From Octopus sinensis (lineage: Eukaryota), in assembly GCF_006345805.1 (NCBI RefSeq), contig NC_042997.1:190030001-190094000 (forward strand): 64,000 bases of DNA, read 5' to 3'. Numbering within the stretch: position 1 is the stretch's first letter; the number at the start of each line of letters is the position of its first letter. Shown piece after piece: positions 4,784 through 63,760 of the stretch. Under the pieces are notes generated by a model that worked only from the letters and a program-made list of their open reading frames with translations, did no database searches and had not been told where the DNA came from. Position numbers and translations under genes: made by a program.

Positions 4784-4818
<35 letters not shown>

Positions 4819-5270: not shown

Positions 5271-5272
<2 letters not shown>

Positions 5273-10567: not shown

Positions 10568-11248
<681 letters not shown>

Positions 11249-22823: not shown

Positions 22824-22895
<72 letters not shown>

Positions 22896-22952
22896 TTAGT
22901 GAATTGAAGAAATGGAGCTGAACGGAGATTGAACAGAAATCGTTTTATTGCA

Positions 22953-23031
22953 TTCTACACGTGTTTCGAAAGCCACATTTACCAAATTCCGATTGCATAA
23001 GGAGACCATATTGTGTCTTTCTCTTCAGGAA
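22953..23031 (-). ncRNA. Type I hammerhead ribozyme in left palindrome arm
   Basis: Mirror copy of 23555-23634, core intact. Confidence 0.8.
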
Positions 23032-23554
23032 GAAATAGGAAATCCGTTGGCAAAAACAAAAACAGAACAGAGGCGGAGCAAAACAAATCGAACGAGGCTC
23101 CTAAGAGCCCATGGCCAAACTGTTTATCAATGTATGTTGAAATCGGGTGGTGGGTGCGTTGAAGATTTTAACAGGTCAGGCAGCGGTCATTCCGGTGGGT
23201 GAGAGCACGGGGTGCGTAGATGTTCTTTGTGACCGAGACTAAAGTTCTGACTATTTAAAGAATATTAGGTGTATTATATGGGGCGGGACAGATTTTGACT
23301 CGCCCCATATAATACACCTAATATTCTTTAAATAGTCAGAACTTTAGTCTCGGTCACAAAGAACATCTACGCACCCCGTGCTCTCACCCACCGGAATGAC
23401 CGCTGCCTGACCTGTTAAAATCTTCAACGCACCCACCACCCGATTTCAACATACGTTGATAAACAGTTTGGCCATGGGCTCTTAGGAGCCTCGTTCGATT
23501 TGTTTTGCTCCGCCTCTGTTCTGTTTTTGTTTTTGCCAACGGATTTCCTATTTC

Positions 23555-23634
23555 TTCCTGAAGAGAAAGACACAATATGGTCTCCTTATTCAATCGGAAT
23601 TTGGTAAATTGTGGCTTTCGAAACACGTGTAGAA
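23555..23634 (+). ncRNA. Type I hammerhead ribozyme in right palindrome arm
   Basis: UUC-CUGAAGA-GAAAG...CUUUC-GAAA-CACGUG-UA-GAA; stem II extended by CACAAU/AUUGUG. Confidence 0.82.
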
Positions 23635-23854
23635 TGCAATAAAACGATTTCTGTTCAATCTCCGTTCAACTCCATTTCTTCAATTCACTAATAATATTAA
23701 AATTCAATTATCCGCACCAACGCATGGTTGCAACACCATATGGTTGTACCTCCAACCGTGCTGTCTTCTGCTGTGATTTTTGCTACCAAGGTATCGGTTA
23801 AACTTTTGATTAATCTGCAACAAGATTATTCATCTTTCTATTTCACAATATATA

Positions 23855-24046: not shown

Positions 24047-24240
24047 CGCCACGCCGGGCAAAATGCTTAGCTGTATTTCGTCTGCCGCTATGTTCTGAGG
24101 TCGACTTTGCCTTTCATCCTTTCGGGGTCGATTAAATAAGTACCAGTTACGCACTGGGGTTGATATAATCGACTTAATCCGTTTGTCTGTCCTTGTTTGT
24201 CTTCTCTGTGTTTAGCCCCTTTTGGGTAGTAAAGAAGTAG
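24047..24240 (+). mobile_element. SINE, Nin-like family
   Basis: Same core and ccccttgtgggtagtaaag-like tail. Confidence 0.8.
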
Positions 24241-24899
24241 GTTTACGGACAAAACAACGCAAATCAAACCTGAAATGTATTTAACTATTAGGAAACATCG
24301 CTCTGCTATTGATTGGGAGGGGAAATTATTTACAGAAGGAAGCACAGTAGGTCTTCTCTGAGGAGCAATCAACGTATTGTAAAACGGTCGTCTAGAAACT
24401 CCCTCCTTCATTTTCCCACACTTTGGTGGCAAAGAAAAAGCGTATTCATAAAAAGAAATATTATATATTGATCACTATTGTCATGAGTTTTAACAATCAT
24501 TTTTAGAATTAATCTACTCGTATGAATCGAAGACTAGGAACTGTGAGTTCAAGCTACGTTAAACGAATGTGAAACGCAGCATACTAAACAGAAAATTGAA
24601 AGTGAATTTTATAATGTAGACGATATGACAATATTTGTTTCAGCATTTGTTTTTATTATACTTCAGTATTTCTATTGAAATTGCTTTGCAATACAATTTA
24701 TATGTGTAAACTAAAAACTCAAAAGATAATTTGTTCTGGAATTTTTATTAAAATTTTTATCATAATTGTCATGGCTTCAAATTTTTTATAGTTTTCCTAG
24801 GAAAATTGATTTCTCCTTTAAACTAGTAAATTCTAATCATTTTTCTATATGATACTTGAATTTATCACGTGATATTCTTACGTGTGGTCTTGATTACCT

Positions 24900-29254: not shown

Positions 29255-30235
29255 TAATATTTAATAGTAAGTAGACATGCCCATTACGTTTTTCAATGCA
29301 AGGACCCTACTAGGCATGTTACTAATCAGATGACTAATATTCTCTTGCGTAATTTCTTGCCAAGTGTCATGCGGTAATCTCAAAAGACCGGGATTTGAAG
29401 ATGCTTTCTTCTTCTTCTTATGACGTGTCTTCTCCATTATACCCCAGAGGTGTTCAATATGGTTCATATCTGGTGACTGGCTTGACCATGGAAGCTTTTT
29501 AATACCATTCTCATCCAACAAATCCTTTGTTATTTTAGCCGTGTGACAAGGCGTCTTCTTTAAACATTTCACTACTTGAGAAGATCGGAAAGAGTCCTTC
29601 CTGCAATACAGACACATACGTATCTGAATTAAATTTTCTCTCACACTCCACCAGTTCTGCTCAACCAGTGCTCCAAATTGGTGCCCATACCATTAGAGAA
29701 TAGCTGCCGCCTTTCATTGTTGACTGCAATCTTTTCACATTAAATTCTTGATGTCTCTAGACCCACATTCGACGACTGTCAGGAAATTCGGCAAATCTGA
29801 ACACATCAGAAAATATGGCTGTGTCCCAAAATACTAGCGTCCTCTCCACCATGTCACCGACCCAATAATCTCTCCTCTTGATGTTGTCTAGTCGAAGAAG
29901 TGGCTTCCTTGTTGTTAGTCTGCCATAGCAAACAAGTTTGCGGAGATACCTGAAGGCTGCTCTGGGACTGACATCAACTGGTCATGCTATGTCAGAGGCC
30001 TTGCAACGAGGGTTATTCTCCACACTTCTATCAGAAAAAGGAAGGATCATGTCATAAAGCCCTGGTCAACCTGGGCGAAGTGATGTGGAAACCTCCCCGT
30101 CTCTGGTGAATTGAACAATCACCCTTTTAACTGTAGAAAGTGAGATCCCAAGGTTTTCTGTGACTTTACGCTATGTCCACATTCAGAATGAGCCACAATA
30201 CAACCTCCTTTGAAATTCCAAGGCTTCTTTTGTAC
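29255..30235 (-). mobile_element. Degenerate Tc1-like transposase
   Basis: LGISLSTVKR...RKPLL...IFSD...MKGGSYSLMVW...LPWSSQSPDMNHIEHLW, with stops and frameshifts. Confidence 0.85.
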
Positions 30236-36852: not shown

Positions 36853-37925
36853 GATGATTTTAAATTCAAAAGCTTCGAAAGATTTTACAAATTTAAGTAA
36901 ATGAGTTTCTGCGACTTGATATTATTTCATGGCACTACAGGAAATATAGCAAAGAGCTATGTCAAGTACGAAAATTGTGAAAATACCACTTACAAAATTA
37001 CAGTTTTCTGTCTTAGATAAGCATTTTCATGAGGAGGATTTCATTTAACATTTTCCGTATTAGTGATGAGGAAAATAATTGAAAAATATGGGAAATATAT
37101 TCATTTACCGGTAAATGAAAGCTTCTTCCTTTTTTTAATCCCATTTTTGAAGGAACACGCTTAATATCTGTTTCAAATACATATTGTACGTATTTTACAT
37201 ATTCTGTACTCGGAATGTGTAAAGAAATAGGAATAGAAATCTTCATTAGTTTATCAGTTTTATATTAAATAAGAATACTTCGTCCTATAAAGTGGAGGCA
37301 CAATGGCCCAGTGGTTAGGGCAGCAGACTCACGGTCGGAGGATCATGGTTTCGATTCCCAGACCGAGCGTTGTGTGTGTTTATATGGCGAAAACACCTAA
37401 AGCTCCACAAGGCTCCGGCATTGGGGTGATGGCGACCCCTATTGTATTCTTTCACCCCAACTTTCTCTCAGTCTTTCTTCCTGTTTCTTGGGTAACGCTG
37501 CGATGGACTGGCGTCCCGTTCAGCTGGTGGGAACACATACGCCACTGAAATCATGCCCATGGTCCCGGCTAGGCTTGAAAAGTGCGCATAAGTAAATAAA
37601 AATCGTCCTATAGAAGTGCTTGCCATTAGACGTCATGTGTATTACAAAATACATTGGGAATTTTCATCGTCCGACATATTTTGGGTGTTTCTTCACAGCC
37701 AGCAAAAAACTGATGGGATCACTGCCTCAGAAAGCTGGTCGGTCATGTTTAACTTTCTGATTGATGACACGAAATCACAAATAAACTTTTGAAACAGACG
37801 TGTCGAATTGCAATGAGGTTGTGTTTATCTCAAATATCTTCAAACATAGAAAACGTCACCTCCAAAAACCAAGCACATGCATCTCATCAATGATTATAAC
37901 ACACACGCACACACACACATACATG

Positions 37926-37974
<49 letters not shown>

Positions 37975-37976
<2 letters not shown>

Positions 37977-40900
37977 TATAAAATTAATTAAGGGTAGAAA
38001 TTGATATTTATCAATTAAGACCAGTGGTCTAGCATATTAAAAAAGAATCCGAAGATTAAAATATTTATATATACCAATTAAGGACTGAACACGAAAAGTG
38101 GACAGTCAACATGCTAGATATAGACGTCAAATCGCCATTCACCACAAAAGATTATGTTCTCAGATCAAACTCAGCACAAAACCATAGCAATAAACAAGTG
38201 AAAAATATACGAAATAAAATAATTACCCATGTACTAATTAGTTTCGACTGTTATTTTCCGCAAGGAAAACTGCAGCCATCATCGGCATGGTCCGTTATAA
38301 ATGCAATTTGCTGGACTAGATGCAAACACGATACCGAAATATCGCGTACATGGAGTTCAGCCTATTACATTTGAATATATCTTTCAAATGCCTTTACTTT
38401 GGCGCGTTGAGGCCCGAGAAAACTAGCCTGCAGCTAATAATTAGCAGCAATCAATTTATCGGTTAGAGAACATATTTATTTATATAAAATTAATTAAGGG
38501 TAGAAATTGATATTTATCAATTAAGACCAGTGGTCTAGCATATTAAAAAAGAATCCGAAGATTAAAATATTTATATATACCAATAAGGACTGAACGAAAA
38601 GTGGACAGTCAACATGCTAGATATAGACGTCAAATCGCCATTCACCACAAAAGATTATGTTCTCAGATCAAACTCAGCACAAAACCATAGCAATAAACAA
38701 GTGAAAAATATACGAAATAAAATAATTACCCATGTACTAATTAGTTTCGACTGTTATTTTCCGCAAGGAAAACTGCAGCAAGCATCTCAGCATGGTCCGT
38801 TATAAATGCAATTTGCTGGACTAGATGCAAACACGATACCGAAATATCGCGTGCATGGAGTTCAGCCTATTACATTTGAATATATCTTTCAAATGCCTTT
38901 ACTTTGGCGCGTTGAGGTCCGAGAAAACTAGCCAGCACTAATATTAGCAGCAGTCAATTTATCGGTTAGAGAACATATTTATTTATATAAAATTGATTAA
39001 GGGTAGAAATTGATATTTATCAATTAAGACCAGTGGTCTAGCATATTAAAAAAGAATCCGAAGATTAAAATATTTATATATACCAATTAAGGACTGAGCA
39101 CGAAAAGTGGACAGTCAACATGCTAGATATAGACGTCAAATCGCCATTCACCACAAAAGATTATGTTCTCAGATCAAACTCAGCACAAAACCATAGCAAT
39201 AAACAAGTGAAAAATATACGAAAAAAATAATTACCCATGTACTAATTAGTTTCGACTGTTATTTTCCGCAAGGAAAACTGCAGCCATCATCAGCATGGTC
39301 CGTTATAAATGCAATTTGCTGGACTAGATGCAAACACGATACCGAAATATCGCGTGCATGGAGTTCAGCCTATTACATTTGAATATATCTTTCAAATGCC
39401 TTTACTTTGGCGCGTTGAGGCCCGAGAAAACTAGCCTGCAGCTAATAATTAGCAGCAGTCAATTTATCGGTTAGAGAACATATTTATTTATATAAAATTG
39501 ATTAAGGGTAGAAATTGATATTTATCAATTAAGACCAATGGTCTAGCATATTAAAAAAGAATCCGAAGATTAAAATATTTATATATACCAATTAAGGACT
39601 GAGCACGAAAAGTGGACAGTCAACATGCTAGATATAGACGTCAAATCGCCATTCACCACAAAAGATTATGTTCTCAGATCAAACTCAGCACAAAACCATA
39701 GCAATAAACAAGTGAAAAATATACGAAATAAAATAATTACCCATGTACTAATTAGTTTCGACTGTTATTTTCCGCAAGGAAAACTGCAGCCATCATCAGC
39801 ATGGTCCGTTATAATGCAATTTGCTGGACTAGATGCAAACACGATACCGAAATATCGCGTGCATGGAGTTCAGCCTATTACATTTGAATATATCTTTCAA
39901 ATGCCTTTACTTTGGCGCGTTGAGGCCCGAGAAAACTAGCCTGCAGCTAATAATTAGCAGCAATCAATTTATCGGTTAGAGAACATATTTATTTATATAA
40001 AATAAATTAAGGGTAGAAATTGATATTTATCAATTAAGACCAGTGGTCTAGCATATTAAAAAAGAATCCGAAGATTAAAATATTTATATATACCAATTAA
40101 GGACTGAACACGAAAAGTGGACAGTCAACATGCTAGATATAGACGTCAAATCGCCATTCACCACAAAAGATTATGTTCTCAGATCAAACTCAGCACAAAA
40201 CCATAGCAATAAACAAGTGAAAAATATACGAAATAAAATAATTACCCATGTACTAATTAGTTTCGACTGTTATTTTCCGCAAGGAAAACTGCAGCCATCA
40301 TCGGCATGGTCCGTTATAAATGCAATTTGCTGGACTAGATGCAAACACGATACCGAAATATCGCGTACATGGAGTTCAGCCTATTACATTTGAATATATC
40401 TTTCAAATGCCTTTACTTTGGCGCGTTGAGGCCCGAGAAAACTAGCCTGCAGCTAATAATTAGCAGCAGTCAATTTATCGGTTAGAGAACATATTTATTT
40501 ATATAAAATTGATTAAGGGTAGAAATTGATATTTATCAATTAAGACCAGTGGTCTAGCATATTAAAAAAGAATCCGAAGATTAAAATATTTATATATACC
40601 AATTAAGGACTGAGCACGAAAAGTGGACAGTCAACATGCTAGATATAGACGTCAAATCGCCATTCACCACAAAAGATTATGTTCTCAGATCAAACTCAGC
40701 ACAAAACCATAGCAATAAACAAGTGAAAAATATACGAAATAAAATAATTACCCATGTACTAATTAGTTTCGACTGTTATTTTCCGCAAGGAAAACTGCAG
40801 CCATCATCAGCATGGTCCGTTATAAATGCAATTTGCTGGACTAGATGCAAACACGATACCGAAATATCGCGTGCATGGTGTTCAGCCTATTACATTTGAA

Positions 40901-43900
40901 TATATCTTTCAAATGCCTTTTCTTTGGCGCGTTGAGGCCCGAGAAAACTAGCCTGCAGCTAATAATTAGCAGCAATCAATTTATCGGTTAGAGAACATAT
41001 TTATTTATATAAAATTAATTAAGGGTAGAAATTGATATTTATCAATTAAGACCAGTGGTCTAGCATATTAAAAAAGAATCCGAAGATTAAAATATTATAT
41101 ATACCAATTAAGGACTGAACACGAAAAGTGGACAGTCAACATGCTAGATATAGACGTCAAATCGCCATTCACCACAAAAGATTATGTTCTCAGATCAAAC
41201 TCAGCACAAAACCATAGCAATAAACAAGTGAAAAATATACGAAATAAAATAATTACCCATGTACTAATTAGTTTCGACTGTTATTTTCCGCAAGGAAAAC
41301 TGCAGCCATCATCGGCATGGTCCGTTATAAATGCAATTTGCTGGACTAGATGCAAACACGATACCGAAATATCGCGTACATGGAGTTCAGCCTATTACAT
41401 TTGAATATATCTTTCAAATGCCTTTACTTTGGCGCGTTGAGGCCCGAGAAAACTAGCCTGCAGCTAATAATTAGCAGCAATCAATTTATCGGTTAGAGAA
41501 CATATTTATTTATATAAAATTAATTAAGGGTAGAAATTGATATTTATCAATTAAGACCAGTGGTCTAGCATATTAAAAAAGAATCCGAAGATTAAAATAT
41601 TTATATATACCAATTAAGGACTGAACACGAAAAGTGGACAGTCAACATGCTAGATATAGACGTCAAATCGCCATTCACCACAAAAGATTATGTTCTCAGA
41701 TCAAACTCAGCACAAAACCATAGCAATAAACAAGTGAAAAATATACGAAATAAAATAATTACCCATGTACTAATTAGTTTCGACTGTTATTTTCCGCAAG
41801 GAAAACTGCAGCCATCATCAGCATGGTCCGTTATAAATGCAATTTGCTGGACTAGATGCAAACACGATACCGAAATATCGCGTGCATGGAGTTCAGCCTA
41901 TTACATTTGAATATATCTTTCAAATGCCTTTACTTTGGCGCGTTGAGGCCCGGAAAACTAGCCTGCAGCTAATAATTAGCAGCAGTCAATTTATCGGTTA
42001 GAGAACATATTTATTTATATAAAATTGATTAAGGGTAGAAATTGATATTTATCAATTAAGACCAGTGGTCTAGCATATTAAAAAAAGATCCGAAGATTAA
42101 AATATTTATATATACCAATTAAGGACTGAGCACGAAAAGTGGACAGTCAACATGCTAGATATAGACGTCAAATCGCCATTCACCACAAAAGATTATGTTC
42201 TCAGATCAAACTCAGCACAAAACCATAGCAATAAACAAGTGAAAAATATACGAAATAAAATAATTACCCATGTACTAATTAGTTTCGACTGTTATTTTCC
42301 GCAAGGAAAACTGCAGCCATCAGCATGGTCCGTTATAAATGCAATTTGCTGGACTAGATGCAAACACGATACCGAAATATCGCGTGCATGGAGTTCAGCC
42401 TATTACATTTGAATATATCTTTCAAATGCCTTTACTTTGGCGCGTTGAGGTCCGAGAAAACTAGCCTGCAGCTAATAATTAGCAGCAGTCAATTTATCGG
42501 TTAGAGAACATATTTATTATATAAAATTGATTAGGGGTAGAAATTGATATTTATCAATTAAGACCAGTGGTCTAGCATATTAAAAAAGAATCCGAAGATT
42601 AAAATATTTATATATACCAATTAAGGACTGAGCACGAAAAGTGGACAGTCAACATGCTAGATATAGACGTCAAATCGCCATTCACCACAAAAGATTATGT
42701 TCTCAGATCAAACTCAGCACAAAACCATAGCAATAAACAAGTGAAAAATATACGAAATAAAATAATTACCCATGTACTAATTAGTTTCGACTGTTATTTT
42801 CCGCAAGGAAAACTGCAGCCATCATCAGCATGGTCCGTTATAAATGCAATTTGCTGGACTAGATGCAAACACGATACCGAAATATCGCGTGCATGGAGTT
42901 CAGCCTATTACATTTGAATATATTTCAATGCCTTTACTTTGGCGCGTTGAGGCCCGAGAAAACTAGCCTGCAGCTAATAATTAGCAGAGCAGCAGTCAAT
43001 TATCGGTTAGAGAACATATTTATTTATATAAAATTGATTAAGGGTAGAAATTGATATTTATCATTAAGACCAGTGGTCTAGCATATTAAAAAAGAATCCG
43101 AAGATTAAAATATTATATATACAATTAAGGACTGAGCACGAAAAGTGGACAGTCAACATGCTAGATATAGACGTCAAATCGCCATTCACCACAAAAGATT
43201 ATGTTCTCAGATCAAACTCAGCACAAAACCATAGCAATAAACAAGTGAAAAATATACGAAATAAAATAATTACCCATGTACTAATTAGTTTCGACTGTTA
43301 TTTTCCGCAAGGAAAACTGCAGCCATCATCAGCATGGTCCGTTATAAATGCATTTGCTGGACTAGATGCAAACACGATACCGAAATATCGCGTGCATGGA
43401 GTTCAGCCTATTACATTTGAATATATCTTTCAAATGCCTTTCTTTTGGCGCGTTGAGGCCCGAGAAAACTAGCCTGCAGCTAATAATTAGCAGCAATCAA
43501 TTATCGGTTAGAGAACATATTTATTTATATAAAATTAATTAAGGGAATAGAAATGATATTATCAATTAAGACCAGTGGTCTAGCATATTAAAAAAGAATC
43601 CGAAGATTAAAATATTTTATATACCAATTAAGGACTGAACACGAAAAGTGGACAGTCAACATGCTAGATATAGACGTCAAATCGCCATTCACCACAAAAG
43701 ATTATGTTCTCAGATCAAACTCAGCACAAAACCATAGCAATAAACAAGTGAAAAATATACGAAATAAAATAATTCCATGTACTAATTAGTTTCGACTGTT
43801 ATTTTCCGCAAGGAAAACTGCAGCCATCATCGGCATGGTCCGTTATAAATGCAATTTGCTGGACTAGATGCAAACACGATACCGAAATATCGCGTACATG

Positions 43901-46630
43901 GAGTTCAGCCTATTACATTTGAATATATCTTTCAAATGCCTTTACTTTGGCGCGTTGAGGCCCGAGAAAACTAGCCTGCAGCTAATAATTAGCAGCAATC
44001 AATTTATCGGTTAGAGAACATATTTATTTATATAAAATTAATTAAGGGTAGAAATTGATATTTATCAATTAAGACCAGTGGTCTAGCATATTAAAAAAGA
44101 ATCCGAAGATAAAATATTTATATATACCAATTAAGGACTGAACACGAAAAGTGGACAGTCAACATGCTAGATATAGACGTCAAATCGCCATTCACCACAA
44201 AAGATTATGTTCTCAGATCAAACTCAGCACAAAACCATAGCAATAAACAAGTGAAAAATATACGAAAAATAAAATAATTACCCATGTACTAATTAGTTTC
44301 GACTGTTATTTTCCGCAAGGAAAACTGCAGCCATCATCAGCATGGTCCGTTATAAATGCAATTTGCTGGACTAGATGCAAACACGATACCGAAATATCGC
44401 GTGCATGGAGTTCAGCCTATTACATTTGAATATATCTTTCAAATGCCTTACTTTGGCGCGTGAGGCCCGAGAAAACTAGCCTGCAGCTAATAATTAGCAG
44501 CAGTCAATTTATCGGTTAGAGAACATATTTATTTATATAAAATTGATTAGGGGTAGAAATTGATATTATCAATTAAGACCAGTGGTCTAGCATATTAAAA
44601 AAGAATCCGAAGATTAAAATATTTATATATACCAATTAAGGACTGAGCACGAAAAGTGGACAGTCACATGCTAGATATAGACGTCAATCGCCATTCACCA
44701 CAAAAGATTATGTTCTCAGATCAAACTCAGCACAAAACCATAGCAATAAACAAGTGAAAAATATACGAAATAAAATAATTACCCATGTACTAATTAGTTT
44801 CGACTGTTATTTTCCGCAAGGAAAACTGCAGCCATCATCAGCATGGTCCGTTATAATGCAATTTGCTGGACTAGATGCAAACACGATACCGAAATATCGC
44901 GTGCATGGAGTTCAGCCTATTACATTTGAATATATCTTTCAAATGCCTTTACTTTGGCGCGTTGAGGTCCGAGAAAAACTAGCTGCAGCTAATAATTAGC
45001 AGCAGTCAATTATCGGTTAGAGAAATATTTATTTATATAAAATTGATTAAGGGTAGAAATTGATATTTATCAATTAAGACCAGTGGTCTAGCATATTAAA
45101 AAAGAATCCGAAGATTAAAATATTATATATACCAATTAAGGACTGAGCACGAAAAGTGGACAGTCAACATGCTAGATATAGACGTCAAATCGCCATTCAC
45201 CACAAAAGATTATGTTCTCAGATCATCAAACTCAGCACAAAACCATAGCAATAAACAAGTGAAAAATATACGAAATAAAATAATTACCCATGTACTAATT
45301 AGTTTCGACTGTTATTTTCCGCAAGGAAGGAAAAACTGCAGCCATCATCAGCATGGTCCGTTATAAATGCAATTTGCTGGACTAGATGCAAACACGATAC
45401 CGAAATATCGCGTGCATGGAGTTCAGCCTATTACATTTGAATATATCTTTCAAATGCCTTTACTTTGGCGCGTTGAGGCCCGAGAGAAAACTAGCCTGCA
45501 GCTAATAATTAGCAGCAGTCAATTTATCGGTTAGAGAACATATTTATTTATATAAAATAATTAAGGGTAGAAATTGATATTTATCAATTAAGGACAGTGG
45601 TCTAGCATATTAAAAAAGAATCCGAAGATTAAAATATTTATTATATACCAATTAAGGACTGAGCACGAAAAGTGGACAGTCAACATGCTAGATATAGACG
45701 TCAAATCGCCATTCACCACAAAAGATTATGTTCTCAGATCAAACTCAGCACAAAACCATAGCAATAAACAAGTGAAAAATATACGAATAAACTAATTACC
45801 CATGTACTAATTAGTTTCGACTGTTATTTTCCGCAAGGAAAACTGCAGCCATCATCAGCATGGTCCGTTATAAATGCAATTTGCTGGACTAGATGCAAAC
45901 ACGATACCGAAATATCGCGTGCATGGGTTCAGCCTATTACATTTGAATATATCTTTCAAATGCCTTACTTTGGCGCGTTGAGGCCCGAGAAAACTAGCCT
46001 GCAGCTAATAATTAGCAGCAGTCATTTTATCGGTTAGAGAACATATTTATTTATATAAAATTAATTAAGGGTAGAAATTGATATTTATCAATTAAGACCA
46101 GTGGTCTAGCATATTAAAAAAGAATCCGAAGATTAAAATATTTATATATACCAATTAAGGACTGAACACGAAAAGTGGACAGTCAACATGCTAGATATAG
46201 ACGTCAAATCGCCATTCACCACAAAAGATTATGTTCTCAGATCAAACTCAGCACAAAACCATAGCAATAAACAAGTGAAAAATATACGAATAAAATAATT
46301 ACCCATGTACTAATTAGTTTCGACTGTTATTTTCCGCAAGGAAAACTGCAGCCATCATCAGCATGGTCCGTTATAAATGCAATTTGCTGGACTAGATGCA
46401 AACACGATACCGAAATATCGCGTGCATGGAGTTCAGCCTATTACATTTGAATATATCTTTCAAATGCCTTTACTTTGGCGCGTTGAGGCCCGAGAAAACT
46501 AGCCTGCAGCTAATAATTAGCAGCAGTCAATTTATCGGTTAGAGAACATATTTATTTATATAAAATTGATTAAGGGTAGAAATTGATATTTATCAATTAA
46601 GACCAGTGGTCTAGCATATTAAAAAAGAAT
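37975..46630 (-). repeat. Tandem array, 17 full units of ~505-506 bp plus a partial unit; each unit carries a hammerhead ribozyme motif (retrozyme/PLE pLTR-like)
   Basis: Unit begins aaattaattaagggtagaaattgatattt. HHR stem I (ccatg) positions: 38227, 38730, 39235, 39741, 40246, 40752, 41257, 41763, 42268, 42770, 43274, 43775, 44282, 44783, 45288, 45800, 46303. The array begins in a (TA)n tract and ends in a TA/TG tract. Confidence 0.97.
39235..39298 (-). ncRNA. Type I minimal hammerhead ribozyme (representative array copy 3)
   Basis: Minus strand: CCAUG-CUGAUGA-U-GGCUG-CA-GUUUUCC-UUGC-GGAAAAU-AA-CAGUC-GAAA-CUAAUUAG-UA-CAUGG. Complete core, stems I and II pair, palindromic helix III, GUA cleavage triplet. 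Confidence 0.9.
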
Positions 46631-46647
46631 ATATATGTGTGTGTGTG

Positions 46648-46689
<42 letters not shown>

Positions 46690-48320: not shown

Positions 48321-48499
48321 TTTGTATGTGAACATATATATATATATATATTGTATATAATGTATTTAATATTCTTCGTATATCGGCCTGCTTGGCCTTA
48401 CATTAACTCGTATACACACACACGCACCCACACACACATACACACACACACACACTTATACTGACAAGGACTGTATGCGCTCGAAATCACTGATCGAGA

Positions 48500-48562
<63 letters not shown>

Positions 48563-48774
48563 TAGATATGTTTCGACCAAAGATTGGTCCAGGCCATGTC
48601 TAACTTAATAGCACCACCTGATATGATTATCTAAATCCTGTTTAAGTCAAGTTTTGTTTGTGGTCCATTCAAGTAGTGAGTTTTTGTTGGGTGAGTTGTA
48701 TCCAATTATGGGTGGCTTATCTGGTATTCCTTGAAGGAATCTATCCAGAATCCGTTTAAAGTTGATGGGATCCT

Positions 48775-48914
<140 letters not shown>

Positions 48915-49502
48915 TATATATACTGTGCATATATACTTCTGTTCTTTTTGGAAGATATTCTTTCGTGATGGGTGACATTCTTGTTCAGCGTCATCATTTC
49001 TTCTATTGAATAGAAGGTCGTATTATCAGAAAGATATCATAGAAGAAAATAGCATTCTCAGACGCACCGAACGGTTGCTTTCTATTTGATACGTTACTGT
49101 CGTGTTTATAAAAAAAAATTTATCAACTAAAACACAAAGACTATTCATGTCAACAGTTGAATTCCAACACACTTGTGACGCTTAAATTCCTGGTTTCCAC
49201 GAGGGAGCGCCTTCGATGTGAAAACATATTTGCGCTTGAATGAAAATTGCTCCACGAAAATTTCCCACATGATAGTCATTATAATTAAGTTTTCCCGACA
49301 AGTTTCAATGTCAAGTAAATTCGAGTTGAAATCAATCTGTTATTTCACCTTAAATTGCATCATTGAACTACTAAATAAAACGCAGCATCAAAGGAATAAT
49401 TACTTTGTTTTTGTAGATAAATAAATAAATGAATAAATGAATACACAATAAAATTCAAAGGAAGACTGAATATTTGGAAAAATTCGCCAGAACAAAACGA
49501 AA

Positions 49503-49540
<38 letters not shown>

Positions 49541-49611
49541 TTTCGCACTATATATTTGGCGTTAATTTGCTTCAGCTTAATTTATTTTTACATTAATCTT
49601 AATCTTATTTT

Positions 49612-49656
49612 GGTCAGAGTTCTTTCGTCACACTTCTGTGACCTCATCAGTGGTCC
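49612..49656 (-). ncRNA. Hammerhead motif with partly decayed stem I
   Basis: GGACCA-CUGAUGA-G-GUCAC-AGAAGU-GUGAC-GAAA-GAAC-UC-UGACC; in a short unit between (TA)n tracts. Confidence 0.55.
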
Positions 49657-49719
49657 TTTGCTTTCTTCTTTCTCATTTGTGTGTCTCTCCTTACTAACGA
49701 TCAGCCATTTTGTCCATAT

Positions 49720-49768
<49 letters not shown>

Positions 49769-50099
49769 GTATGTATGGACACAGATACACATGCATATAT
49801 GTATATGGGCGTATGTGTTTGTGTGTGCATGTGTACGTGTGCATGTGTATGTATGTGTGCTTGTATGTATATATTTATTTACTGATTCATTCAATCTATA
49901 GATTTCTGGCATACATCTTCCCACGAACATATATGCTCATTTACGTACACGTCCATTTACACACATATATATACGTACTTAATCAACCCTACATGCATAT
50001 ATCTAGGTTTAGGTGTACGGACGGAGGAGTAATTAATTATATATTTGGTTGTGTTAATTTTTTTTGTTTGTTTTTGTTCATTCTACGCTGGACACTCAC

Positions 50100-50196
50100 T
50101 CATGCAGTCATTACTCCAAATTCTCCACTTTATAATGTTCGAATGATCGCATAAGACTGGGAGTTTCGGAGATGCAAACGAGTGAACACAAGCCAC
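50100..50196 (-). CDS. Candidate internal exon (97 nt)
   Basis: Acceptor tatttattctaag, donor TGA|gtgagt, frame VACVHSFASPKLPVLCDHSNIIKWRIWSNDCM; phase-compatible with neighbouring candidates. Confidence 0.35.
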
Positions 50197-50449
50197 CTTA
50201 GAATAAATATAGACACAAATGCATACAGTTATGCACACGCATATGTACATATCACAAGTGCACACGCATACACATACACCCCTCCATAGACATAGAGATA
50301 ATCATATATATGTATGTATATATATGTACAAATATGTGTGTGTATACATATGTATATATATACGTATGCACACACGCATATGTTATATATATATGTATAT
50401 ACATATATAACATATATATATATACATATATATATATATTAACATATAT

Positions 50450-50482
<33 letters not shown>

Positions 50483-50705
50483 GTACGTTATACATTAGTG
50501 TATTAAATTCCCGTCTGGCATAATAAATTCGAATAATCTATCTTTTGGGTGATTAGCATGTTTCCATTATTGTATACATTTAGAATCACCATAATGTTGA
50601 TCGATAGTGAGTGAATATGATGACGACTGCAACGATATTTGTTGTAGTCGTTATTGTTGTAGTTGTTTTTGTTGTTGTTGTTACTGTTGTTATTTGTGTT
50701 GCTTT

Positions 50706-50745
50706 AGATGATGATGGTGATCATGATGATGATGATGATGATGAC

Positions 50746-50789
<44 letters not shown>

Positions 50790-51010
50790 CGATGATGTCG
50801 ACGGTGGTGATGATGGTGATGATGGTGATGATGGCAACGATGACGACGACAAAAGTAACCATGATGATAATAATGATGATGATGATGATGATGATGATGA
50901 CGACGACAGTGATGATGATGATGATGACGGTGGTGATGATGGCAACGACGACGACGGCGACGTCAAAAGTAACCATGATGATAGTAATGATGATGATGAT
51001 GATGTTGATG

Positions 51011-51047
<37 letters not shown>

Positions 51048-51150
51048 CAACGACGACGACGGTTGTGATGATGGTGATGACGACAAAAGTAACCATGATG
51101 ATAGTAATGATGATGACGATGTTGATGAGGATGCTCACGATGATGATGAT
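50706..51150. repeat. (GAT/GAC)n repeat with three aaaagtaaccatgatgat-anchored subunits
   Basis: Direct inspection. Confidence 0.95.
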
Positions 51151-51954
51151 GGGCAAATGATGACGATTAACTGCGGAACATTATGTAAAGTACGGAACTT
51201 AAAGCCATAAGTAAATTAGATAACATATTTATTAGTTGAAAACTGTTTAAAGCTGCAGATGATATAAAGTAATAGCTTTGCAATAAAGGGGATATATTTC
51301 CCCCAAGTTACTTAATTAGAGAGGGATTAATGAGCCACATAACGAGTTTAATAGTATTGTAATTGAGAATTTTACAAAGTGCATTACAAAATTACATTAA
51401 ACCTCCTGTATAGATCTATCACACAAAGCAGCACTTTGGACAGTGTCTCCAAGTGAAACCATAAATTATGAAAGTTTTTGCATTCTAATGAATTTACGGT
51501 CTTTCGAAAAAAGTCTCGATAATTTCCATTCGATTATGAATCACGGTGAAAATATCTAAGTTCTACATGCCGCGCTTCCATGATTCCATTTGTCGTTTAT
51601 CATGATATAAAGTAGAAATATATCTAATGGTTAGCAGAAACCCAGAAAAAACAAACCATGGTCGTTATTACTTAATAACACAGTTTCCACCATGCCAAAA
51701 TATGACACCGCTGTCGTGCCATTCAGCTTGGAGATTTGAAAATATTTGGCTACTAATAGTGTTTCTAATAGGCACAAGGCCTGGAGATTTGAGGAGCGGG
51801 GTTAGTCGATTACATATACGCTAGTTCTCAATAGGCAATTATTTGATCGGTAAAAAGTCAAAGCTGACCTCAGTGATGAAATTTGAACTTGGAACTTAAA
51901 ACCGGAACAAATCCAGCTAAGCGTTTTTCTTCGGCGTGCATGCTCGCCATTTTA

Positions 51955-55399: not shown

Positions 55400-55401
<2 letters not shown>

Positions 55402-55810
55402 CTGTGTGGTAAGTAGCTTGCTTACCAACTACATGGTTCTAGGTTCAGTCCCACTGCGTGGCTTCTTGGGCAAGTGTCTTCTATTATAGCCTCGGGCCGA
55501 TCATATCCTTGTGAGTGGATTTGGTAGACGGAAACTGAAACAAATCCGTCATATATATGTATATATATGTGTGTGTGTGTGTGTGTATTTGTATGTCAGT
55601 GTTTGTCCCCCGCCCCCCGCCAACATCGCTTGACAACCGATGCTGATGTGTTTATGCCCCCTAAATTTAGCGGTTCGGCAAAAGAGTCGAATAGAATAAA
55701 GTACTAGGCTTACAAAGAATAAGTCCTGGGGGCGATTTGCTCGACTAAAGGCGGTGCTCCAGCATGGCCATACTCAAATGACTGAAACAAGTAAATGAAT
55801 AAAAGAATAA
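55400..55810 (+). mobile_element. SINE family B
   Basis: Family match. Confidence 0.88.
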
Positions 55811-56104: not shown

Positions 56105-57654
56105 CTAGAAAATGGAGAAAACTTTTGATCAACAAACAAACAAACAAATAAGACCACATCTGTAGATTTTATTTTAATATAAAACATGACATAACATTTC
56201 TATGACAACAATTCTTACGGCCGTTTCTGCTTCCAATGCCTCTCGGTACTTACAAAAGAATTATGAAAATAATATTCGTCATCTTCTTAGGATATTAGAT
56301 CTAGTACATGAAGCTTCATCAGAGTGAATACAAATGCGTAAAATAAAATATACGAAAGGAAGAGAGAATAGGAAAGAAAATGGCCTTGAGAAGAGGCCAG
56401 GAGGTTCAATAGATAAAAATCATGCCTTCTTCCAGCGTAGAGCTTCGAAGTCGATAGGCAAAATAGTGATCTAACAATGGTCTAGGAAAATATTTACGGG
56501 TTATTTCTATATAAAGTGGGAACCAGGATGTTTGAAGAGTAGTGAAATGAAGTTAGCACTAAATTATGGCAAGAAATTACTAACATGTCTAGAAAAAGAA
56601 TAGCACTTATGTAATAGTAAATAGGGTTAGTCAATATTTATCCAAAAGCAAAACCGTAGGGTTCTTATAATAGTGTACTTACTGAAATATTGTAGAGACC
56701 ACTACCTGTTGCCCGCAATGGAATTGACCAAAGTCAACTGGTCAATTACATTTGAACTAAGGGCAAAAGTTAAAACCGTTTCAAGGGATATGTAAATAAA
56801 GAAGAAAGTGAACCAGTAAAAAAAGGGTGCTGGAAAGAAGACTATGATATAAGCGACTATGGTTTAAGCGATTAATTTGGAATTAGACGCTGAAAATCCA
56901 CCAGAGTACACGGTCGCATTTTCGCAGAATCCCGGACTTTCGTGAAATACAAAAAGCGTTCATAGCAAAATGTATGTAATCTTTATATAATTCATGCTAA
57001 ATCAATAACGAAAACTTGTAGCAACAATGTTTAAGAGATATCTTACGAATTATGTAAATTTAATAGTAGTTTACTTATTTACGGGACAGTTAAAATACGA
57101 CAACTCTCTTTATATTCTTTATGCTTGAGAATCACCTGAGACTGGCAGTCAGTCATAACTTTATTAAATGGGTGAAACAGCGAAATCTCTTGTTATATAT
57201 TACATCAATATGTTGTGGTAATAGCAAGTTTTGATGTGGTATTAAATGAAATAGTTGTTAGTCATTAGGAGTTAAATGTAAAAGTTTGTTCAAAATTTCA
57301 TACAGTTATATTTCAGTTTTAATGTAGTGTAAAATTCGTTGCATAATCTTGCGTTTAGTTAACGAAATCGATGAACCATGAAAGAAGGAAAAAAAAAAGA
57401 GAAATTCTGAAAAATGTGTATATGTTTCTTCCTGTACCGCATAAGTTTTTACTTAATCGATTATTTATGGCTTGATTTCATGTTAATTATATGTACAGCT
57501 CGTGTCTACGTTTTACTTCAGGACGCACGAAAATGTTAGTAGACTCCAGTAGTTTCGTTAAAAAGCGATGAGCAATATAAAAACATGCATATATATATAT
57601 GCATTATCTATCTATCTATCTATCATCATATATATATATATATATATAATATAT

Positions 57655-57723
<69 letters not shown>

Positions 57724-57795
57724 ATATCTATCTATATATATATATATATATATATATATGCATATAATCAAAATAAGCAACAAGAATGACACCGG

Positions 57796-57888
57796 TAATT
57801 TGGTACGATCGTTTCGTACTACATCATTTTATTAAATGTTCTAAGTATTACGACAGATTTAAGATGCTGAGTACTCATCAGCCAATTA
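57796..57888 (-). ncRNA. Type I hammerhead ribozyme in a solo element between (TA)n tracts
   Basis: UAAUUGG-CUGAUGA-GUAC...GUAC-GAAA-CGAUCG-UA-CCAAAUUA. Confidence 0.85.
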
Positions 57889-60082: not shown

Positions 60083-60335
60083 TGTGTGTGTGTTGTGTGT
60101 GCATATATGTATGTGTTGTGTATGTGTGTGTATATGTTTGTGTGTCTGTGTTTGTCTCTCAATATCGCTTGACATCGATGCTGGTGTGTTTACGTCCCCG
60201 TAACTTAGTGGTTCAGCAAATAGACCGATCGAATAAGTACTAGGCTTAGAAAGAATAAGTCCTGGGGTCGATTTCTTCGACTAATGGCGGTGCTCCAGCA
60301 TGGCCGCAGTCAAATGACTGAAACAAATAAAAGAG
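59730..60335 (+). mobile_element. SINE family B, interrupted by the 59820-60035 foldback element
   Basis: SINE halves flank the (TA)n containing the insert. Confidence 0.75.
59830..59957. repeat. Foldback with relic hammerhead halves
   Basis: atttaaaagcagcag/ctgctgcttttaaat and acgttcctgttcgtcg/cgacgaacgggaacgt inverted pairs. Confidence 0.75.
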
Positions 60336-61077
60336 TGATTGGAAGTGTTACCACATATTTGCTTGTCAGTTGTTTGACCTTAAGCAGTTGAGCATGGCCC
60401 TTAGTGGCTGCTGATATGTGCATCTCTGATCATGAGCAGAAATAGTGGGGGAGCATCATAGCCATATATTCAGAGAAATTCTATGGGGTTTGGATAATTC
60501 ACCGTTGAAAACACATCCTTAAACAACCTTTATTCAGGGACCTTTTTGAGCAGGATGGGAAAAGTGCGCAAAAATCTCGAGAAGTACGTGGAAAAAAATA
60601 GGGGCTGCAGTAAGGGTGGAGCACTTGCAGAAAACAGCACTGCTTGGAGCCGCTCGAATACTCCGGAAGGTGCTTGAAAAATAAGAGGTGTTACCTGAGT
60701 TAACAAGTAGTGAACTGTCAACACCAGTGTAGTAATTTCCAGCGTTAGAAGCTGTGCAAAGGCAATAATAATATTAATAATTAATAATAATAATAATATT
60801 AATCAAATAATAATAATAATGCTTCGTATATTTTACAATTGTCAATTATATTATGGTCCGGCCTACGTATCAATAACAGTGTCAAATAATATAGATAATA
60901 ACATAATACAACAATAATAATGATGATAATAATAACAATAATTAATAACTAACAATAATAATAACTAATACGACGAACGACGACGACGACGACGACGACG
61001 CGACGATGATGATGATATGATAATGAATATAATATAAGAATAATAATAATATATAATAATATATAATAATAATAATA

Positions 61078-63362: not shown

Positions 63363-63760
63363 AGTGGCTGTGTGGTAAGTAGCTTACTTACCAACCACAT
63401 GGTTCCGGGTTCAGTCCCACTGCGTGGCACTTTGGGAAACTGTCTTCTACTATAGCCTCGGGCCGACCAAAGCCTGGTGAGTGGATTTGGTAGACGGAAA
63501 CTGAAAGAAGCCCGTCGTATATATGTATACATATGTATGTATGTGCATATGTTTGTGTGTCTGTGTTTGTCTCCCCAACATCGCTTGACAACCGATGCTG
63601 GTGTGCTTACGTCCCCGTAAGTTAGCGGTTTTGCAAAAGAGACCGATAGAATAAGTACTAGGCTTACAAAGAATAAGTCCTGGGGTCGATTTGCTCGACT
63701 AAAGGCAGTGCTCCAGCATAGCCGCAGTCAAATGACTGAAACAAGTAAAAGAGTAAAAGC
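63363..63760 (+). mobile_element. SINE family B
   Basis: Full length. Confidence 0.9.

What the first reader, a model, noticed from the sequence alone, without database searches (positions are those of the whole stretch)
37975..46630. 505-bp tandem array is a 17-copy hammerhead ribozyme array (retrozyme-like)
Seen: every unit has, on the minus strand, CCAUG-CUGAUGA-U-[GGCUG..UUUUCC-UUGC-GGAAAA..CAGUC]-GAAA-CUAAUUAG-UA-CAUGG. That is a full type I hammerhead core with a 3-bp helix III built from the palindrome CUAAUUAG and a GUA site (copy 3 would cut between 39240 and 39239). Eleven copies have an intact core. Established: minimal type I HHRs with palindromic helix III occur in Penelope-like pLTRs, metazoan retrozymes and ribozyme satellites (newt satellite 2, Schistosoma Sm-alpha, cricket pDo500), can cleave as dimers, and release monomers that circularise. 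Inference: a minus-strand transcript would be cut into ~505-nt monomers or circRNAs, which a PLE reverse transcriptase could reinsert as multimers. The repeated 87-aa plus-strand ORF is a decoy.
Basis: partly seen in the sequence, partly recalled or inferred. Interest (0 to 1): 0.95.

Follow-up and report, generated by a model that had tools for sequence, protein, structure and literature searches.

The report
Tandem array of hammerhead ribozyme repeats
An 8.65-kb stretch of an animal-type genome is 17 head-to-tail copies of a 505-bp non-coding repeat that each carry a Penelope-type minimal hammerhead self-cleaving RNA motif, which makes it an ordinary, partly decayed member of the known "retrozyme" class of ribozyme-bearing repeats.

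Summary
Window 37981-46630 is a 505-bp tandem array, about 97% identical between units. It has 17 hammerhead (HHR) motifs on the minus strand, and 11 of them have an intact CUGAUGA/GAAA/GUA core.

The motif is the minimal type I HHR of Penelope-like elements (PLEs). It has one unpaired U between A9 and G10.1, a G10.1-C11.1 pair and a long helix II. Helix I is 5 bp and open. Helix III lies inside a 10-nt palindrome.

Folding predicts an inactive monomer and an active double hammerhead. In the minimum-energy fold of a two-unit transcript, the two palindromes pair with each other 505 nt apart.

The array sits in a (TA)n tract, which is a known PLE target. Three further PLE-type HHR loci lie in the same window, each with (TA)n on its 3' side.

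Against this, Rfam Hammerhead_1 gives no hit to the array motif, even at E<=10. No homologues could be retrieved, so covariation is untested. Six of 17 cores are mutated. The window holds no reverse transcriptase. Cleavage, circularisation and mobility remain inference.

Verdict: a new member of a known kind (animal non-LTR retrozyme, PLE-derived).

The parts
37981..46630 (-). Tandem array of the 505-bp unit. Read on the minus (ribozyme-sense) strand it is a 323-nt partial unit, 16 full units and a 251-nt partial unit. GC is 34%.
37926..37980 (.). (TA)28 microsatellite that directly abuts the 3' end (minus sense) of the array. It is the likely target tract. The junction lies in the unit's UUAUAUA stretch, giving microhomology with the tract.
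46631..46687 (.). ATATAT followed by a (GT)n microsatellite, abutting the 5' end (minus sense) of the array.
38227..38290 (-). HHR copy 1. The core is defective: U4->C (CCGAUGA).
38730..38795 (-). HHR copy 2. The core is defective: the CUGAUGA box is scrambled (CUGAGAUGCUUG).
39235..39298 (-). HHR copy 3, intact. Predicted cut between 39240 and 39239.
39741..39804 (-). HHR copy 4, intact. Predicted cut between 39746 and 39745.
40246..40309 (-). HHR copy 5. Defective: U4->C.
40752..40815 (-). HHR copy 6, intact. Predicted cut between 40757 and 40756.
41257..41320 (-). HHR copy 7. Defective: U4->C.
41763..41826 (-). HHR copy 8, intact. Predicted cut between 41768 and 41767.
42268..42328 (-). HHR copy 9. 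Defective: 3-nt deletion in the CUGAUGA-U box (CUGAUGGCUG).
42770..42833 (-). HHR copy 10, intact. Predicted cut between 42775 and 42774.
43274..43337 (-). HHR copy 11, intact. Predicted cut between 43279 and 43278.
43775..43838 (-). HHR copy 12. Defective: U4->C. There is also a 2-nt deletion just 3' of helix I.
44282..44345 (-). HHR copy 13, intact. Predicted cut between 44287 and 44286.
44783..44846 (-). HHR copy 14, intact. Predicted cut between 44788 and 44787.
45288..45356 (-). HHR copy 15. The core is intact, with a 5-nt insertion in the distal part of helix II/loop 2. Predicted cut between 45293 and 45292.
45800..45863 (-). HHR copy 16, intact. Predicted cut between 45805 and 45804.
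46303..46366 (-). HHR copy 17, intact. Predicted cut between 46308 and 46307.
40130..40393 (+). Example of the repeated 87-aa plus-strand ORF, antisense to the ribozyme. It is judged non-coding: frameshifted between units, no Pfam match and no homologue.

Best explanation
The array is a genomic copy of a non-autonomous, PLE-derived ribozyme repeat, that is, an animal non-LTR retrozyme. Each 505-nt unit carries one minimal type I hammerhead of the Penelope kind on the minus strand.

Shown by the sequence and by folding calculations:
- The motif has the complete catalytic core, three helices in type I order, the PLE-typical bulged nucleotide after A9, and a 10-nt palindrome (ACUAAUUAGU) spanning helix III.
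- On its own, one motif is predicted to misfold, with the CUGAU of the core paired to AUUAG of helix III.
- Two motifs in one multimeric transcript are predicted to pair their palindromes into a 10-bp helix III and form a double hammerhead with both cores free.

Inferred from the literature on newt satellite 2, PLE HHRs and metazoan retrozymes:
- A minus-strand transcript of the array would be cut after GUA into roughly 505-nt monomers with 5'-OH and 2',3'-cyclic phosphate ends.
- A host tRNA-type ligase could close these into highly self-paired circles in which the ribozyme is switched off.
- A PLE reverse transcriptase/GIY-YIG endonuclease encoded elsewhere could copy circles or multimers into (TA)n tracts, giving multi-unit insertions whose ends do not coincide with the cut site.

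This particular locus is an aged copy. Units differ by about 3%, 6 of 17 cores are broken, and two unit haplotypes are interspersed, which points to later DNA-level turnover.
For: - Anatomy.
- Chance level: 0.017 hits per shuffled window and 0 hits in 20 Mb of random sequence.
- Monomer predicted off, dimer predicted on. The helix III hairpin is +0.5 kcal/mol with pair probability 0.003, and core nucleotides C3-U7 are 93-99% paired in the monomer ensemble. The dimer minimum-energy structure is the double hammerhead at -48.0 kcal/mol, against 2 x -21.5 for two monomers. The unconstrained minimum-energy fold of a 616-nt two-HHR transcript pairs the two palindromes 505 nt apart.
- Retrozyme-like RNA. 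The circular consensus monomer folds to -138.4 kcal/mol (z = -7.0, 66% paired, 34% GC). There is no coding capacity.
- Unit size and copy number fall within published ranges: 150-450 bp in PMC7229834, and 51-972 bp with up to 300 units in the 2026 preprint.
- Insertion signature. The array ends do not coincide with the cut site (323-nt and 251-nt partial units), and both ends lie in TA repeats.
- All five HHR loci in the window have a (TA)n tract 41-262 nt to their 3' side. Only 10-18% of random positions do. PLEs favour (TA)n and other microsatellites (PMC8557442).
- Other PLE-type HHRs in the window include an inverted pair at the outer ends of a 405-nt-arm inverted repeat.
Against: - Rfam 15 Hammerhead_1 and its clan give no match to the array motif at the gathering score, at E<=10 on 13 kb, or at E<=10 on 111 nt.
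- No homologous repeat could be retrieved from any collection. Covariation in stems I and II is therefore untested. Within the array the stems do not vary at all, which says nothing either way.
- The HHR segment is not clearly better conserved than the rest of the unit, and the CUGAUGA box is hit in 6 of 17 copies.
- There is no closed loop 1, so the loop 1-loop 2 contacts that make natural HHRs fast are absent. PLE minimal HHRs showed only low activity in vitro (PMC4209133).
- No reverse transcriptase or GIY-YIG ORF was seen in the 64-kb window.
- Shared variants in a mosaic of two haplotypes are not what a single rolling-circle copy of one circle would leave.
- There are no expression data.
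Confidence: 0.8

Rival explanations
1. The unit is simply the pseudo-LTR (terminal repeat) of an autonomous Penelope-like element that lives elsewhere in the genome. On this view the array is a run of solo pLTRs left by tandem PLE insertion and internal deletion, not a separate non-autonomous retrozyme family.
For: - The HHR is of the PLE minimal type, not the canonical invertebrate retrozyme type.
- PLEs insert as partial tandems and into (TA)n tracts.
- Retrozyme families are sister to pLTRs in Xenopus.
- PLE-type footprints occur elsewhere in the window.
Against: - There is no reverse transcriptase/endonuclease remnant between or next to the 17 units, or anywhere in the window.
- Seventeen uninterrupted units with a regular 505-bp period are easier to obtain from a short multimeric or circular template than from 17 deletions.
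- The boundary between this reading and the best explanation is partly semantic, since retrozymes are proposed to derive from pLTRs.
Confidence: 0.2
2. The array is an ordinary satellite DNA that expanded only by DNA-level mechanisms (unequal crossing-over, replication slippage). On this view the hammerhead is a dead relic, is never used, and the array is not transcribed or mobile.
For: - Six of 17 cores are mutated, and there is no excess conservation of the HHR segment.
- Two haplotypes defined by three linked sites are interspersed, with recombinant units. This is typical of satellite turnover.
- There is no evidence of expression.
Against: - This reading does not explain why the unit carries a complete PLE-type HHR with a dimer-forming palindrome.
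- It does not explain why the array and the other HHR loci sit against (TA)n tracts.
- DNA-level turnover after an RNA-mediated insertion is compatible with the best explanation, so this rival concerns present activity rather than origin.
Confidence: 0.15
3. The hammerhead-like motif is a chance match in an AT-rich repeat, or the array is an assembly artefact.
For: - Rfam finds nothing.
- All 17 copies descend from one sequence, so the motif counts as one event.
- In a Gb-sized genome, the relaxed descriptor would give hundreds of chance hits at the rate measured.
Against: - The stricter descriptor gives 0 hits in 20 Mb of random sequence.
- The motif has features not demanded by any descriptor: the bulged nucleotide after A9 and the 10-nt perfect palindrome.
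- It lies in a tandem repeat, the genomic setting in which such HHRs are known.
- Three unrelated PLE-type HHR families lie in the same 64 kb.
- Unit-to-unit differences (3%, two haplotypes, indels) do not look like an assembler duplicating one unit.
Confidence: 0.04

Closest known systems
Minimal type I hammerheads of Penelope-like elements (Cervera & de la Pena 2014, PMC4209133; variants with a small palindromic helix III as in Drosophila, rotifer, shrimp and mosquito PLEs)
   Same: - One unpaired nucleotide between A9 and G10.1.
- A conserved G10.1-C11.1 pair.
- A helix II longer than the canonical 4 bp.
- A helix I of 4-5 bp without a defined loop 1.
- A palindromic 15.2-16.2/loop 3 that allows a dimeric active form.
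- Association with (TA)n targets.
   Different: - Here the motif sits in a regular 505-bp, 17-unit tandem array with no reverse transcriptase/GIY-YIG ORF nearby, not in the two pLTRs of a coding element.
- Helix III here is 3 bp plus an AAUU loop. That is longer than the zero-helix-III minimal HHR, but still unstable on its own (+0.5 kcal/mol).
Metazoan non-LTR retrozymes (Cervera & de la Pena 2020, PMC7229834; Li, Clavereau & Pollet 2026 preprint 10.64898/2026.07.22.740005)
   Same: - Head-to-tail repeats of a few hundred bp, each with one type I HHR.
- Non-coding, low GC, and predicted highly self-paired RNA.
- No LTR, primer-binding site or polypurine tract.
- Proposed dependence on PLEs.
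   Different: - The unit (505 bp) is above the 170-400 nt first described, though inside the 51-972 bp range of the 2026 survey.
- The HHR is the PLE minimal type, without loop 1-loop 2 contacts, unlike the canonical fast-cleaving HHRs of coral and mussel retrozymes.
- Only 11 of 17 units keep the core, so the array fails the 2026 preprint's operational definition of an active retrozyme (HHR in all units).
- Expression and circles have not been shown.
Newt satellite 2 / axolotl HHR_Amex1 repeats and the ASBVd-type double hammerhead
   Same: A weak helix III capped by a palindromic loop. A single motif is poorly active, and two motifs in a multimer form an extended helix III and cleave as a dimer.
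   Different: - The amphibian motifs have a 1-bp helix III and keep the loop 1-loop 2 tertiary contacts.
- Their unit sizes (about 330 bp) and sequences are unrelated to this one.
pDo500 satellite of Dolichopoda cave crickets (PMC2837043)
   Same: A roughly 500-bp satellite unit with one hammerhead, proposed to act as a double hammerhead.
   Different: - The pDo500 stems differ: G1.2-C2.2 in stem I and a G-U or U-U pair in stem III.
- In the pDo500 dimer it is stems I and II, not stem III, that form between molecules.
- No sequence relationship could be shown.

Membership tests
Hammerhead ribozyme, type I | Conserved core C3-U4-G5-A6-N7-G8-A9 ... G12-A13-A14, A15.1-U16.1 and H17 (not G) at the cut site | tested here: met
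   CUGAUGA ... GAAA ... U-A|C is present in 11 of 17 copies. The other 6 carry U4->C, a scrambled box or a 3-nt deletion.
Hammerhead ribozyme, type I | Three helices around the core, with helix I open-ended and helices II and III closed by loops | tested here: met
   - Helix I: CCAUG/CAUGG, 5 bp, open.
- Helix II: GGCUG/CAGUC plus GUUUUCC/GGAAAAU, closed by a UUGC loop.
- Helix III: ACU/AGU, closed by an AAUU loop.
Sources.
Hammerhead ribozyme, type I | Match to Rfam covariance model RF00163 (or clan CL00010) at the gathering score | tested here: not met
   - There is no hammerhead hit at the gathering score on the whole window, at E<=10 on 13 kb, or at E<=10 on 111 nt.
- The same model gives sub-threshold full-length hits to the two other HHR families in the window: 19.6 bits with E=0.014, and 11 bits.
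- The 45-position model therefore misses PLE-type variants in general. The likely reasons for the array motif are the bulged U, the 34-nt helix II and the A/U helix III, but this was not tested.
Hammerhead ribozyme, type I | Loop 1-loop 2 tertiary contacts that give fast cleavage at physiological Mg2+ | tested here: not met
   Helix I is 5 bp followed by mismatches, and it is closed only by the remaining ~440 nt of the unit. There is no defined loop 1.
Hammerhead ribozyme, type I | Site-specific self-cleavage | not testable with these tools
   This needs transcription and cleavage assays.
Hammerhead ribozyme, type I | Covariation that supports the helices among homologues | not testable with these tools
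   - No homologue was found in the metagenome, viral, prokaryotic-genome or protein collections.
- The helices are invariant within the array.
- The three HHR families in the window have different helix sequences that all pair. They were found with a descriptor that demands pairing, so this is circular evidence.
PLE-type minimal hammerhead (PMC4209133) | Unpaired nucleotide between A9 and 10.1 | tested here: met
   CUGAUGA-U-GGCUG.
PLE-type minimal hammerhead (PMC4209133) | G10.1-C11.1 pair and a helix II larger than usual | tested here: met
   The G-C pair sits at the base of helix II. The helix has 5 bp, a 2x2 internal loop and then 7 bp.
PLE-type minimal hammerhead (PMC4209133) | [quoted passage not shown] | tested here: met
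   5 bp.
PLE-type minimal hammerhead (PMC4209133) | Palindromic 15.2-16.2 and loop 3, allowing a dimeric active form | tested here: met
   - ACUAAUUAGU is a perfect 10-nt palindrome.
- The minimum-energy cofold is the double hammerhead.
- The fold of a two-unit transcript pairs the two palindromes.
PLE-type minimal hammerhead (PMC4209133) | Location in the pseudo-LTR of an element that encodes RT and a GIY-YIG endonuclease | tested here: not met
   - No RT or endonuclease ORF was seen in the 64-kb window.
- A GIY-YIG-like impression of ORF 11629-12042 was not supported by Pfam or by homology search.
- The rest of the genome could not be searched.
Animal non-LTR retrozyme (PMC7229834; 10.64898/2026.07.22.740005) | Tandem repeats of a short unit, each with one type I HHR, and no LTR/PBS/PPT | tested here: met
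   17 units of 505 bp. This lies within the 51-972 bp range.
Animal non-LTR retrozyme (PMC7229834; 10.64898/2026.07.22.740005) | Non-coding, GC below 50%, and a stable, highly self-paired predicted RNA | tested here: met
   - 34% GC.
- Circular minimum free energy -138.4 kcal/mol, z = -7.0, 66% paired.
- The ORF has no family or homologue.
Animal non-LTR retrozyme (PMC7229834; 10.64898/2026.07.22.740005) | HHR present in all units (the 2026 preprint's definition of an active retrozyme) | tested here: not met
   11 of 17 units have an intact core.
Animal non-LTR retrozyme (PMC7229834; 10.64898/2026.07.22.740005) | [quoted passage not shown] | not testable with these tools
   No transcriptome of the source organism is available here, and the organism was not identified.
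Animal non-LTR retrozyme (PMC7229834; 10.64898/2026.07.22.740005) | Dispersed copies with target-site duplications | tested here: inconclusive
   - There is no second copy of the unit in the window.
- Both flanks are TA repeats, so a target-site duplication cannot be read.

The most novel reading that the evidence does not exclude
The 505-nt unit may define a retrozyme lineage that uses an obligately dimeric, Rfam-invisible PLE-type hammerhead and is still active in the source animal. If so, it would produce abundant ~505-nt circular RNAs, larger than the first-described animal retrozyme circles. Its ribozyme would be on in multimers and off in circles, through the CUGAU/AUUAG alternative pairing. 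Because three further PLE-type HHR families lie in the same 64 kb, standard Rfam annotation of this genome may be missing a large ribozyme population.
Probability: 0.15. Interest if true: 0.5.

Novelty: new member of a known kind. Interest (0 to 1): 0.3.

Why it matters
If this family is transcribed, it would add an example of small ribozyme-made circular RNAs in animals. It would also link a regular tandem array directly to the Penelope-type minimal hammerhead, which fits the recent proposal that animal retrozymes descend from PLE terminal repeats.

On the practical side, the Rfam Hammerhead_1 model misses this motif completely and scores the two other HHR families in the window below threshold. 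Ribozyme counts from routine annotation of such genomes are therefore underestimates.

Beyond that it is an expected kind of repeat. Thousands of such motifs are already described across invertebrates and lower vertebrates.

Tried and rejected
- Rfam search at the gathering score and at E<=10, on the window, on 13 kb and on 111 nt. There was no hammerhead hit for the array. The listed miRNA hits fall on microsatellites.
- The plus-strand ORF as a gene. It has no Pfam family, no homologue in the 5.8-billion-protein collection, and its exact products are not on record. It is frameshifted between units. Rejected.
- Homologous repeats elsewhere. HHR-specific DNA patterns found nothing in metagenome contigs (two scans), viral contigs or prokaryotic genome contigs. 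These collections are largely prokaryotic, viral and metagenomic, so absence there says little.
- Other copies of the unit in the window. There are none outside the array, only AT-rich noise.
- Identifying the organism or a partner PLE from window ORFs. Exact look-ups were empty. Homology searches with the GIY-YIG-like ORF 11629-12042 and the LINE-like ORF 10728-11153 were empty. My impression from memory that the dispersed repeats resemble cephalopod SINEs could not be tested and is not used.
- Six-frame Pfam scan of the flanks. Inspection of all stop-free segments of at least 75 aa showed no convincing RT motif.
- Identity with the cricket pDo500 satellite, which has a similar unit length. 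The stem features differ. Rejected.
- A higher-order repeat. Identity does not depend on unit spacing from 1 to 8 units. Two haplotypes are interspersed without a clean period.
- Selection on the HHR within the array. There are about 4-6 mutation events in the 64-nt motif. My rough expectation from the array-wide rate is about 12, which I did not compute with a tool. This is not informative.

Full report
**1. The observation**

The window is eukaryotic in character. It is 24-41% GC per 2-kb bin and dense with microsatellites and dispersed short repeats.

Between 37981 and 46630 the sequence repeats with a period of 505 bp (autocorrelation). Tandem Repeats Finder did not list the array only because its longest period is 500.

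The plus-strand word CCATGTACTAATTAGTTTCGAC, which is the 3' half of the proposed ribozyme, occurs 17 times without a mismatch.

Read on the minus strand, 11 of the 17 copies have the full 64-nt motif CCAUG-CUGAUGA-U-GGCUG-CA-GUUUUCC-UUGC-GGAAAAU-AA-CAGUC-GAAA-CUAAUUAG-UA|CAUGG. The other six are damaged:
- Copies 1, 5, 7 and 12 have U4->C.
- Copy 2 has a scrambled box.
- Copy 9 lacks three nucleotides of the box.

Copy 15 has an intact core but a 5-nt insertion in the distal part of helix II.

Monomers between cut sites are 501-512 nt and 97% identical on average.

**2. Is it more than chance?**

The 17 copies descend from one sequence, so the motif counts as one event.

- A relaxed type I descriptor was run on dinucleotide shuffles of the window with the array collapsed. 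It requires helix I >=4 bp, CUGANGA, an optional extra nucleotide, helix II >=4 bp, GAAA, helix III >=2 bp and a UH site. It gave 0.017 loci per 112 kb.
- A second descriptor also asks for G10.1-C11.1 and a perfectly palindromic A15.1..U16.1 segment. It gave no hit in 20 Mb of Markov-1 random sequence.

For one 505-bp unit on both strands this is roughly a 1e-4 event.

More telling, the same descriptors find three further, unrelated loci in this one window:
- A solo motif on the minus strand at 57796-57886.
- A pair in opposite orientation at 23552-23637 (+) and about 22950-23031 (-).

A genome region this rich in such motifs is what PLE-bearing animal genomes look like (PMC4209133).

**3. What kind of hammerhead**

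Rfam 15 does not recognise the array motif. There is no hit at the gathering score, at E<=10 on 13 kb, or at E<=10 on 111 nt.

The same model does align full-length, below threshold, to the two other HHR families in the window: 19.6 bits with E=0.014, and 11 bits. So the 45-position model is simply too narrow for this class.

Cervera & de la Pena (2014, PMC4209133) describe what sets the PLE minimal hammerheads apart:
- a conserved G10.1-C11.1 pair;
- a helix II larger than usual;
- palindromic positions 15.2-16.2 and loop 3.

The array motif has every one of these. The 'extra U' that breaks the textbook consensus is therefore a family trait, not a defect.

The canonical, fast-cleaving HHRs of coral and mussel retrozymes have loop 1-loop 2 contacts (PMC7229834). 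This motif has no closed loop 1.

**4. How it would work (computed)**

In isolation:
- The 3-bp AAUU-capped helix III is unstable, at +0.5 kcal/mol with pair probability 0.003.
- Core nucleotides C3-U7 are 93-99% paired with the AUUAG of helix III in an alternative fold.
- The active monomer fold is 3.5 kcal/mol above the minimum free energy.

With two copies:
- The minimum-energy structure is the double hammerhead. The two ACUAAUUAGU palindromes form a 10-bp helix III, helix I forms in trans, and both cores are free. The energy is -48.0 kcal/mol against 2 x -21.5 for two monomers.
- The same inter-motif helix III appears in the unconstrained minimum-energy fold of a 616-nt transcript spanning two consecutive units, 505 nt apart.

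The unit as a circle is predicted to fold to -138.4 kcal/mol (z = -7.0 against shuffles, 66% paired), with the ribozyme in its 'off' fold. This is the switch described for newt satellite 2, avsunviroids and PLE HHRs: cleavage in multimers, protection in the monomeric circle (PMC4209133; PMC7229834).

**5. How it would work (inferred from the literature)**

These steps are not shown here:
- transcription of the minus strand;
- cleavage after GUA;
- circularisation by a host tRNA-type ligase (PMC7229834);
- reverse transcription and insertion by a PLE enzyme encoded elsewhere.

The sequence offers indirect support for an RNA-mediated, PLE-type insertion.

First, the array ends do not coincide with the cut site. 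Read in ribozyme sense, the array is a 323-nt partial unit, 16 full units and a 251-nt partial unit.

Second, its 3' end joins (TA)28 exactly where the unit reads UUAUAUA, and its 5' end joins ATATAT(GT)n. PLEs have a documented bias for microsatellites, with (TA)n reported for Naiads and discussed for Neptune (PMC8557442).

Third, all five HHR loci in the window have a (TA)n tract 41-262 nt on their 3' side, whereas only 10-18% of random positions do.

Fourth, the pair at 22.9-23.7 kb sits at the outer ends of a 98-99% inverted repeat with 405-nt arms. This is the 'inverted 5'-truncated copy' arrangement described for PLEs.

**6. What argues for caution**

- Within the array the helices never vary, which is uninformative.
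- The motif is not clearly better conserved than the rest of the unit, and six cores are broken.
- Twelve shared variant sites define two haplotypes that are interspersed without a clean higher-order period, with recombinant units. This indicates DNA-level turnover after insertion, or a heterogeneous multimeric template.
- No RT or GIY-YIG ORF is present in the window. My GIY-YIG-like reading of ORF 11629-12042 found no support.
- PLE minimal HHRs cleaved only weakly in vitro (PMC4209133).
- The organism could not be identified.

**7. The ORF**

The plus-strand ORF is 87 aa in 7 units. It is frameshifted to other lengths or lost in the rest. It has no Pfam family and no homologue.

**8. Comparison and verdict**

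By function and by structure this is a PLE-type minimal hammerhead in a tandem non-coding repeat. That makes it an animal non-LTR retrozyme in the sense of PMC7229834 and the 2026 preprint (10.64898/2026.07.22.740005). The preprint reports unit lengths of 51-972 bp and arrays of up to 300 units, and it places retrozymes as sisters of PLE pseudo-LTRs.

The locus fails three membership features:
- the Rfam score;
- 'HHR in every unit';
- location in a coding PLE.

None of these contradicts the mechanism.

It is not the cricket pDo500 satellite, despite the similar unit length.

It is a new member of a well-described class, and this particular locus is partly decayed. Interest is modest at 0.3. 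The most useful by-products are the demonstration that Rfam misses this HHR class here and the consistent (TA)n association of four HHR-bearing insertions within 64 kb.

Noticed in passing
window 22888-23699: A near-perfect inverted repeat: arms 22888-23290 and 23296-23699, 98-99% complementary, with a 5-nt spacer. Each arm carries a PLE-type hammerhead near its outer end: UUC-CUGAAGA-GAAAG..CUUUC-GAAA-CACGUG-UA|GAA at 23552-23637 (+) and about 22950-23031 (-). The left end abuts (TA)35 at 22824-22893. Rfam Hammerhead_1 gives 11 bits, below threshold. It looks like two 5'-truncated PLE 3' ends arranged head to head.
   Followed up: partly
window 57796-57886, minus strand: A solo PLE-type hammerhead: UUGG-CUGAUGA-GUACU..(46 nt)..AGUAC-GAAA-CGAUCG-UA|CCAA, with the 8-nt palindrome ACGAUCGU. 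Rfam Hammerhead_1 gives 19.6 bits, E=0.014, full model length, against a gathering score of 34. A long (TA)n tract (57589-57759) begins 41 nt to its 3' side.
   Followed up: partly
window ~49590-49660, minus strand: A decayed hammerhead-like motif: CUGAUGA-G-GUCAC-AGAAGU-GUGAC-GAAA-GAACUC. It has the PLE-type extra nucleotide, but helix I no longer closes. An (AT)17 tract lies 68 nt to its 3' side.
   Followed up: partly
window 62141-62774; also 24091-24471, 55400-55800, 60218-60336, 63287-63754 and others: A very abundant dispersed short repeat that looks like a SINE. It includes a 184-bp unit repeated three times in tandem at 62141-62774. Its stop-free translations recur all over the window. 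ARAGORN and Rfam call no tRNA in it.
   Followed up: no
window 17223-17492: A 140-bp unit repeated 1.9 times, containing a tRNA-like stretch (GGCGCAATGGCCCAGTGGTTAAGG ... GGTTTCGATTCCCAGACC). It is probably a tRNA-derived SINE duplicated in tandem. ARAGORN does not call it as a tRNA.
   Followed up: no
window 29261-29692, minus strand: A remnant of a Tc1/mariner-type transposase. The Pfam DDE_3 match is below threshold (E=1.3e-4, 22.3 bits against a cut-off of 28.6).
   Followed up: partly
window 8470-8946 (+), 10710-11150 (+), 11632-12051 (-): Stop-free segments that look, from memory of their motifs, like LINE C-terminal or RT-tail remnants. One also gave a GIY-YIG-like impression. None has a Pfam hit of note, and the two that were searched have no homologue in the protein collection, so they remain unclassified.
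   Followed up: partly
window 4773-5271 and 50639-51151: Long imperfect trinucleotide arrays (CTG/CTA about 150 copies; GAT about 148 copies). They create long low-complexity ORFs on several frames and should not be taken for genes.
   Followed up: no
window 48400-50500, 37900-37975: Many sub-threshold Rfam microRNA hits (mir-297, mir-466, mir-3149 and others) fall on TA/CA microsatellites. They are artefacts of self-complementary simple repeats.
   Followed up: yes
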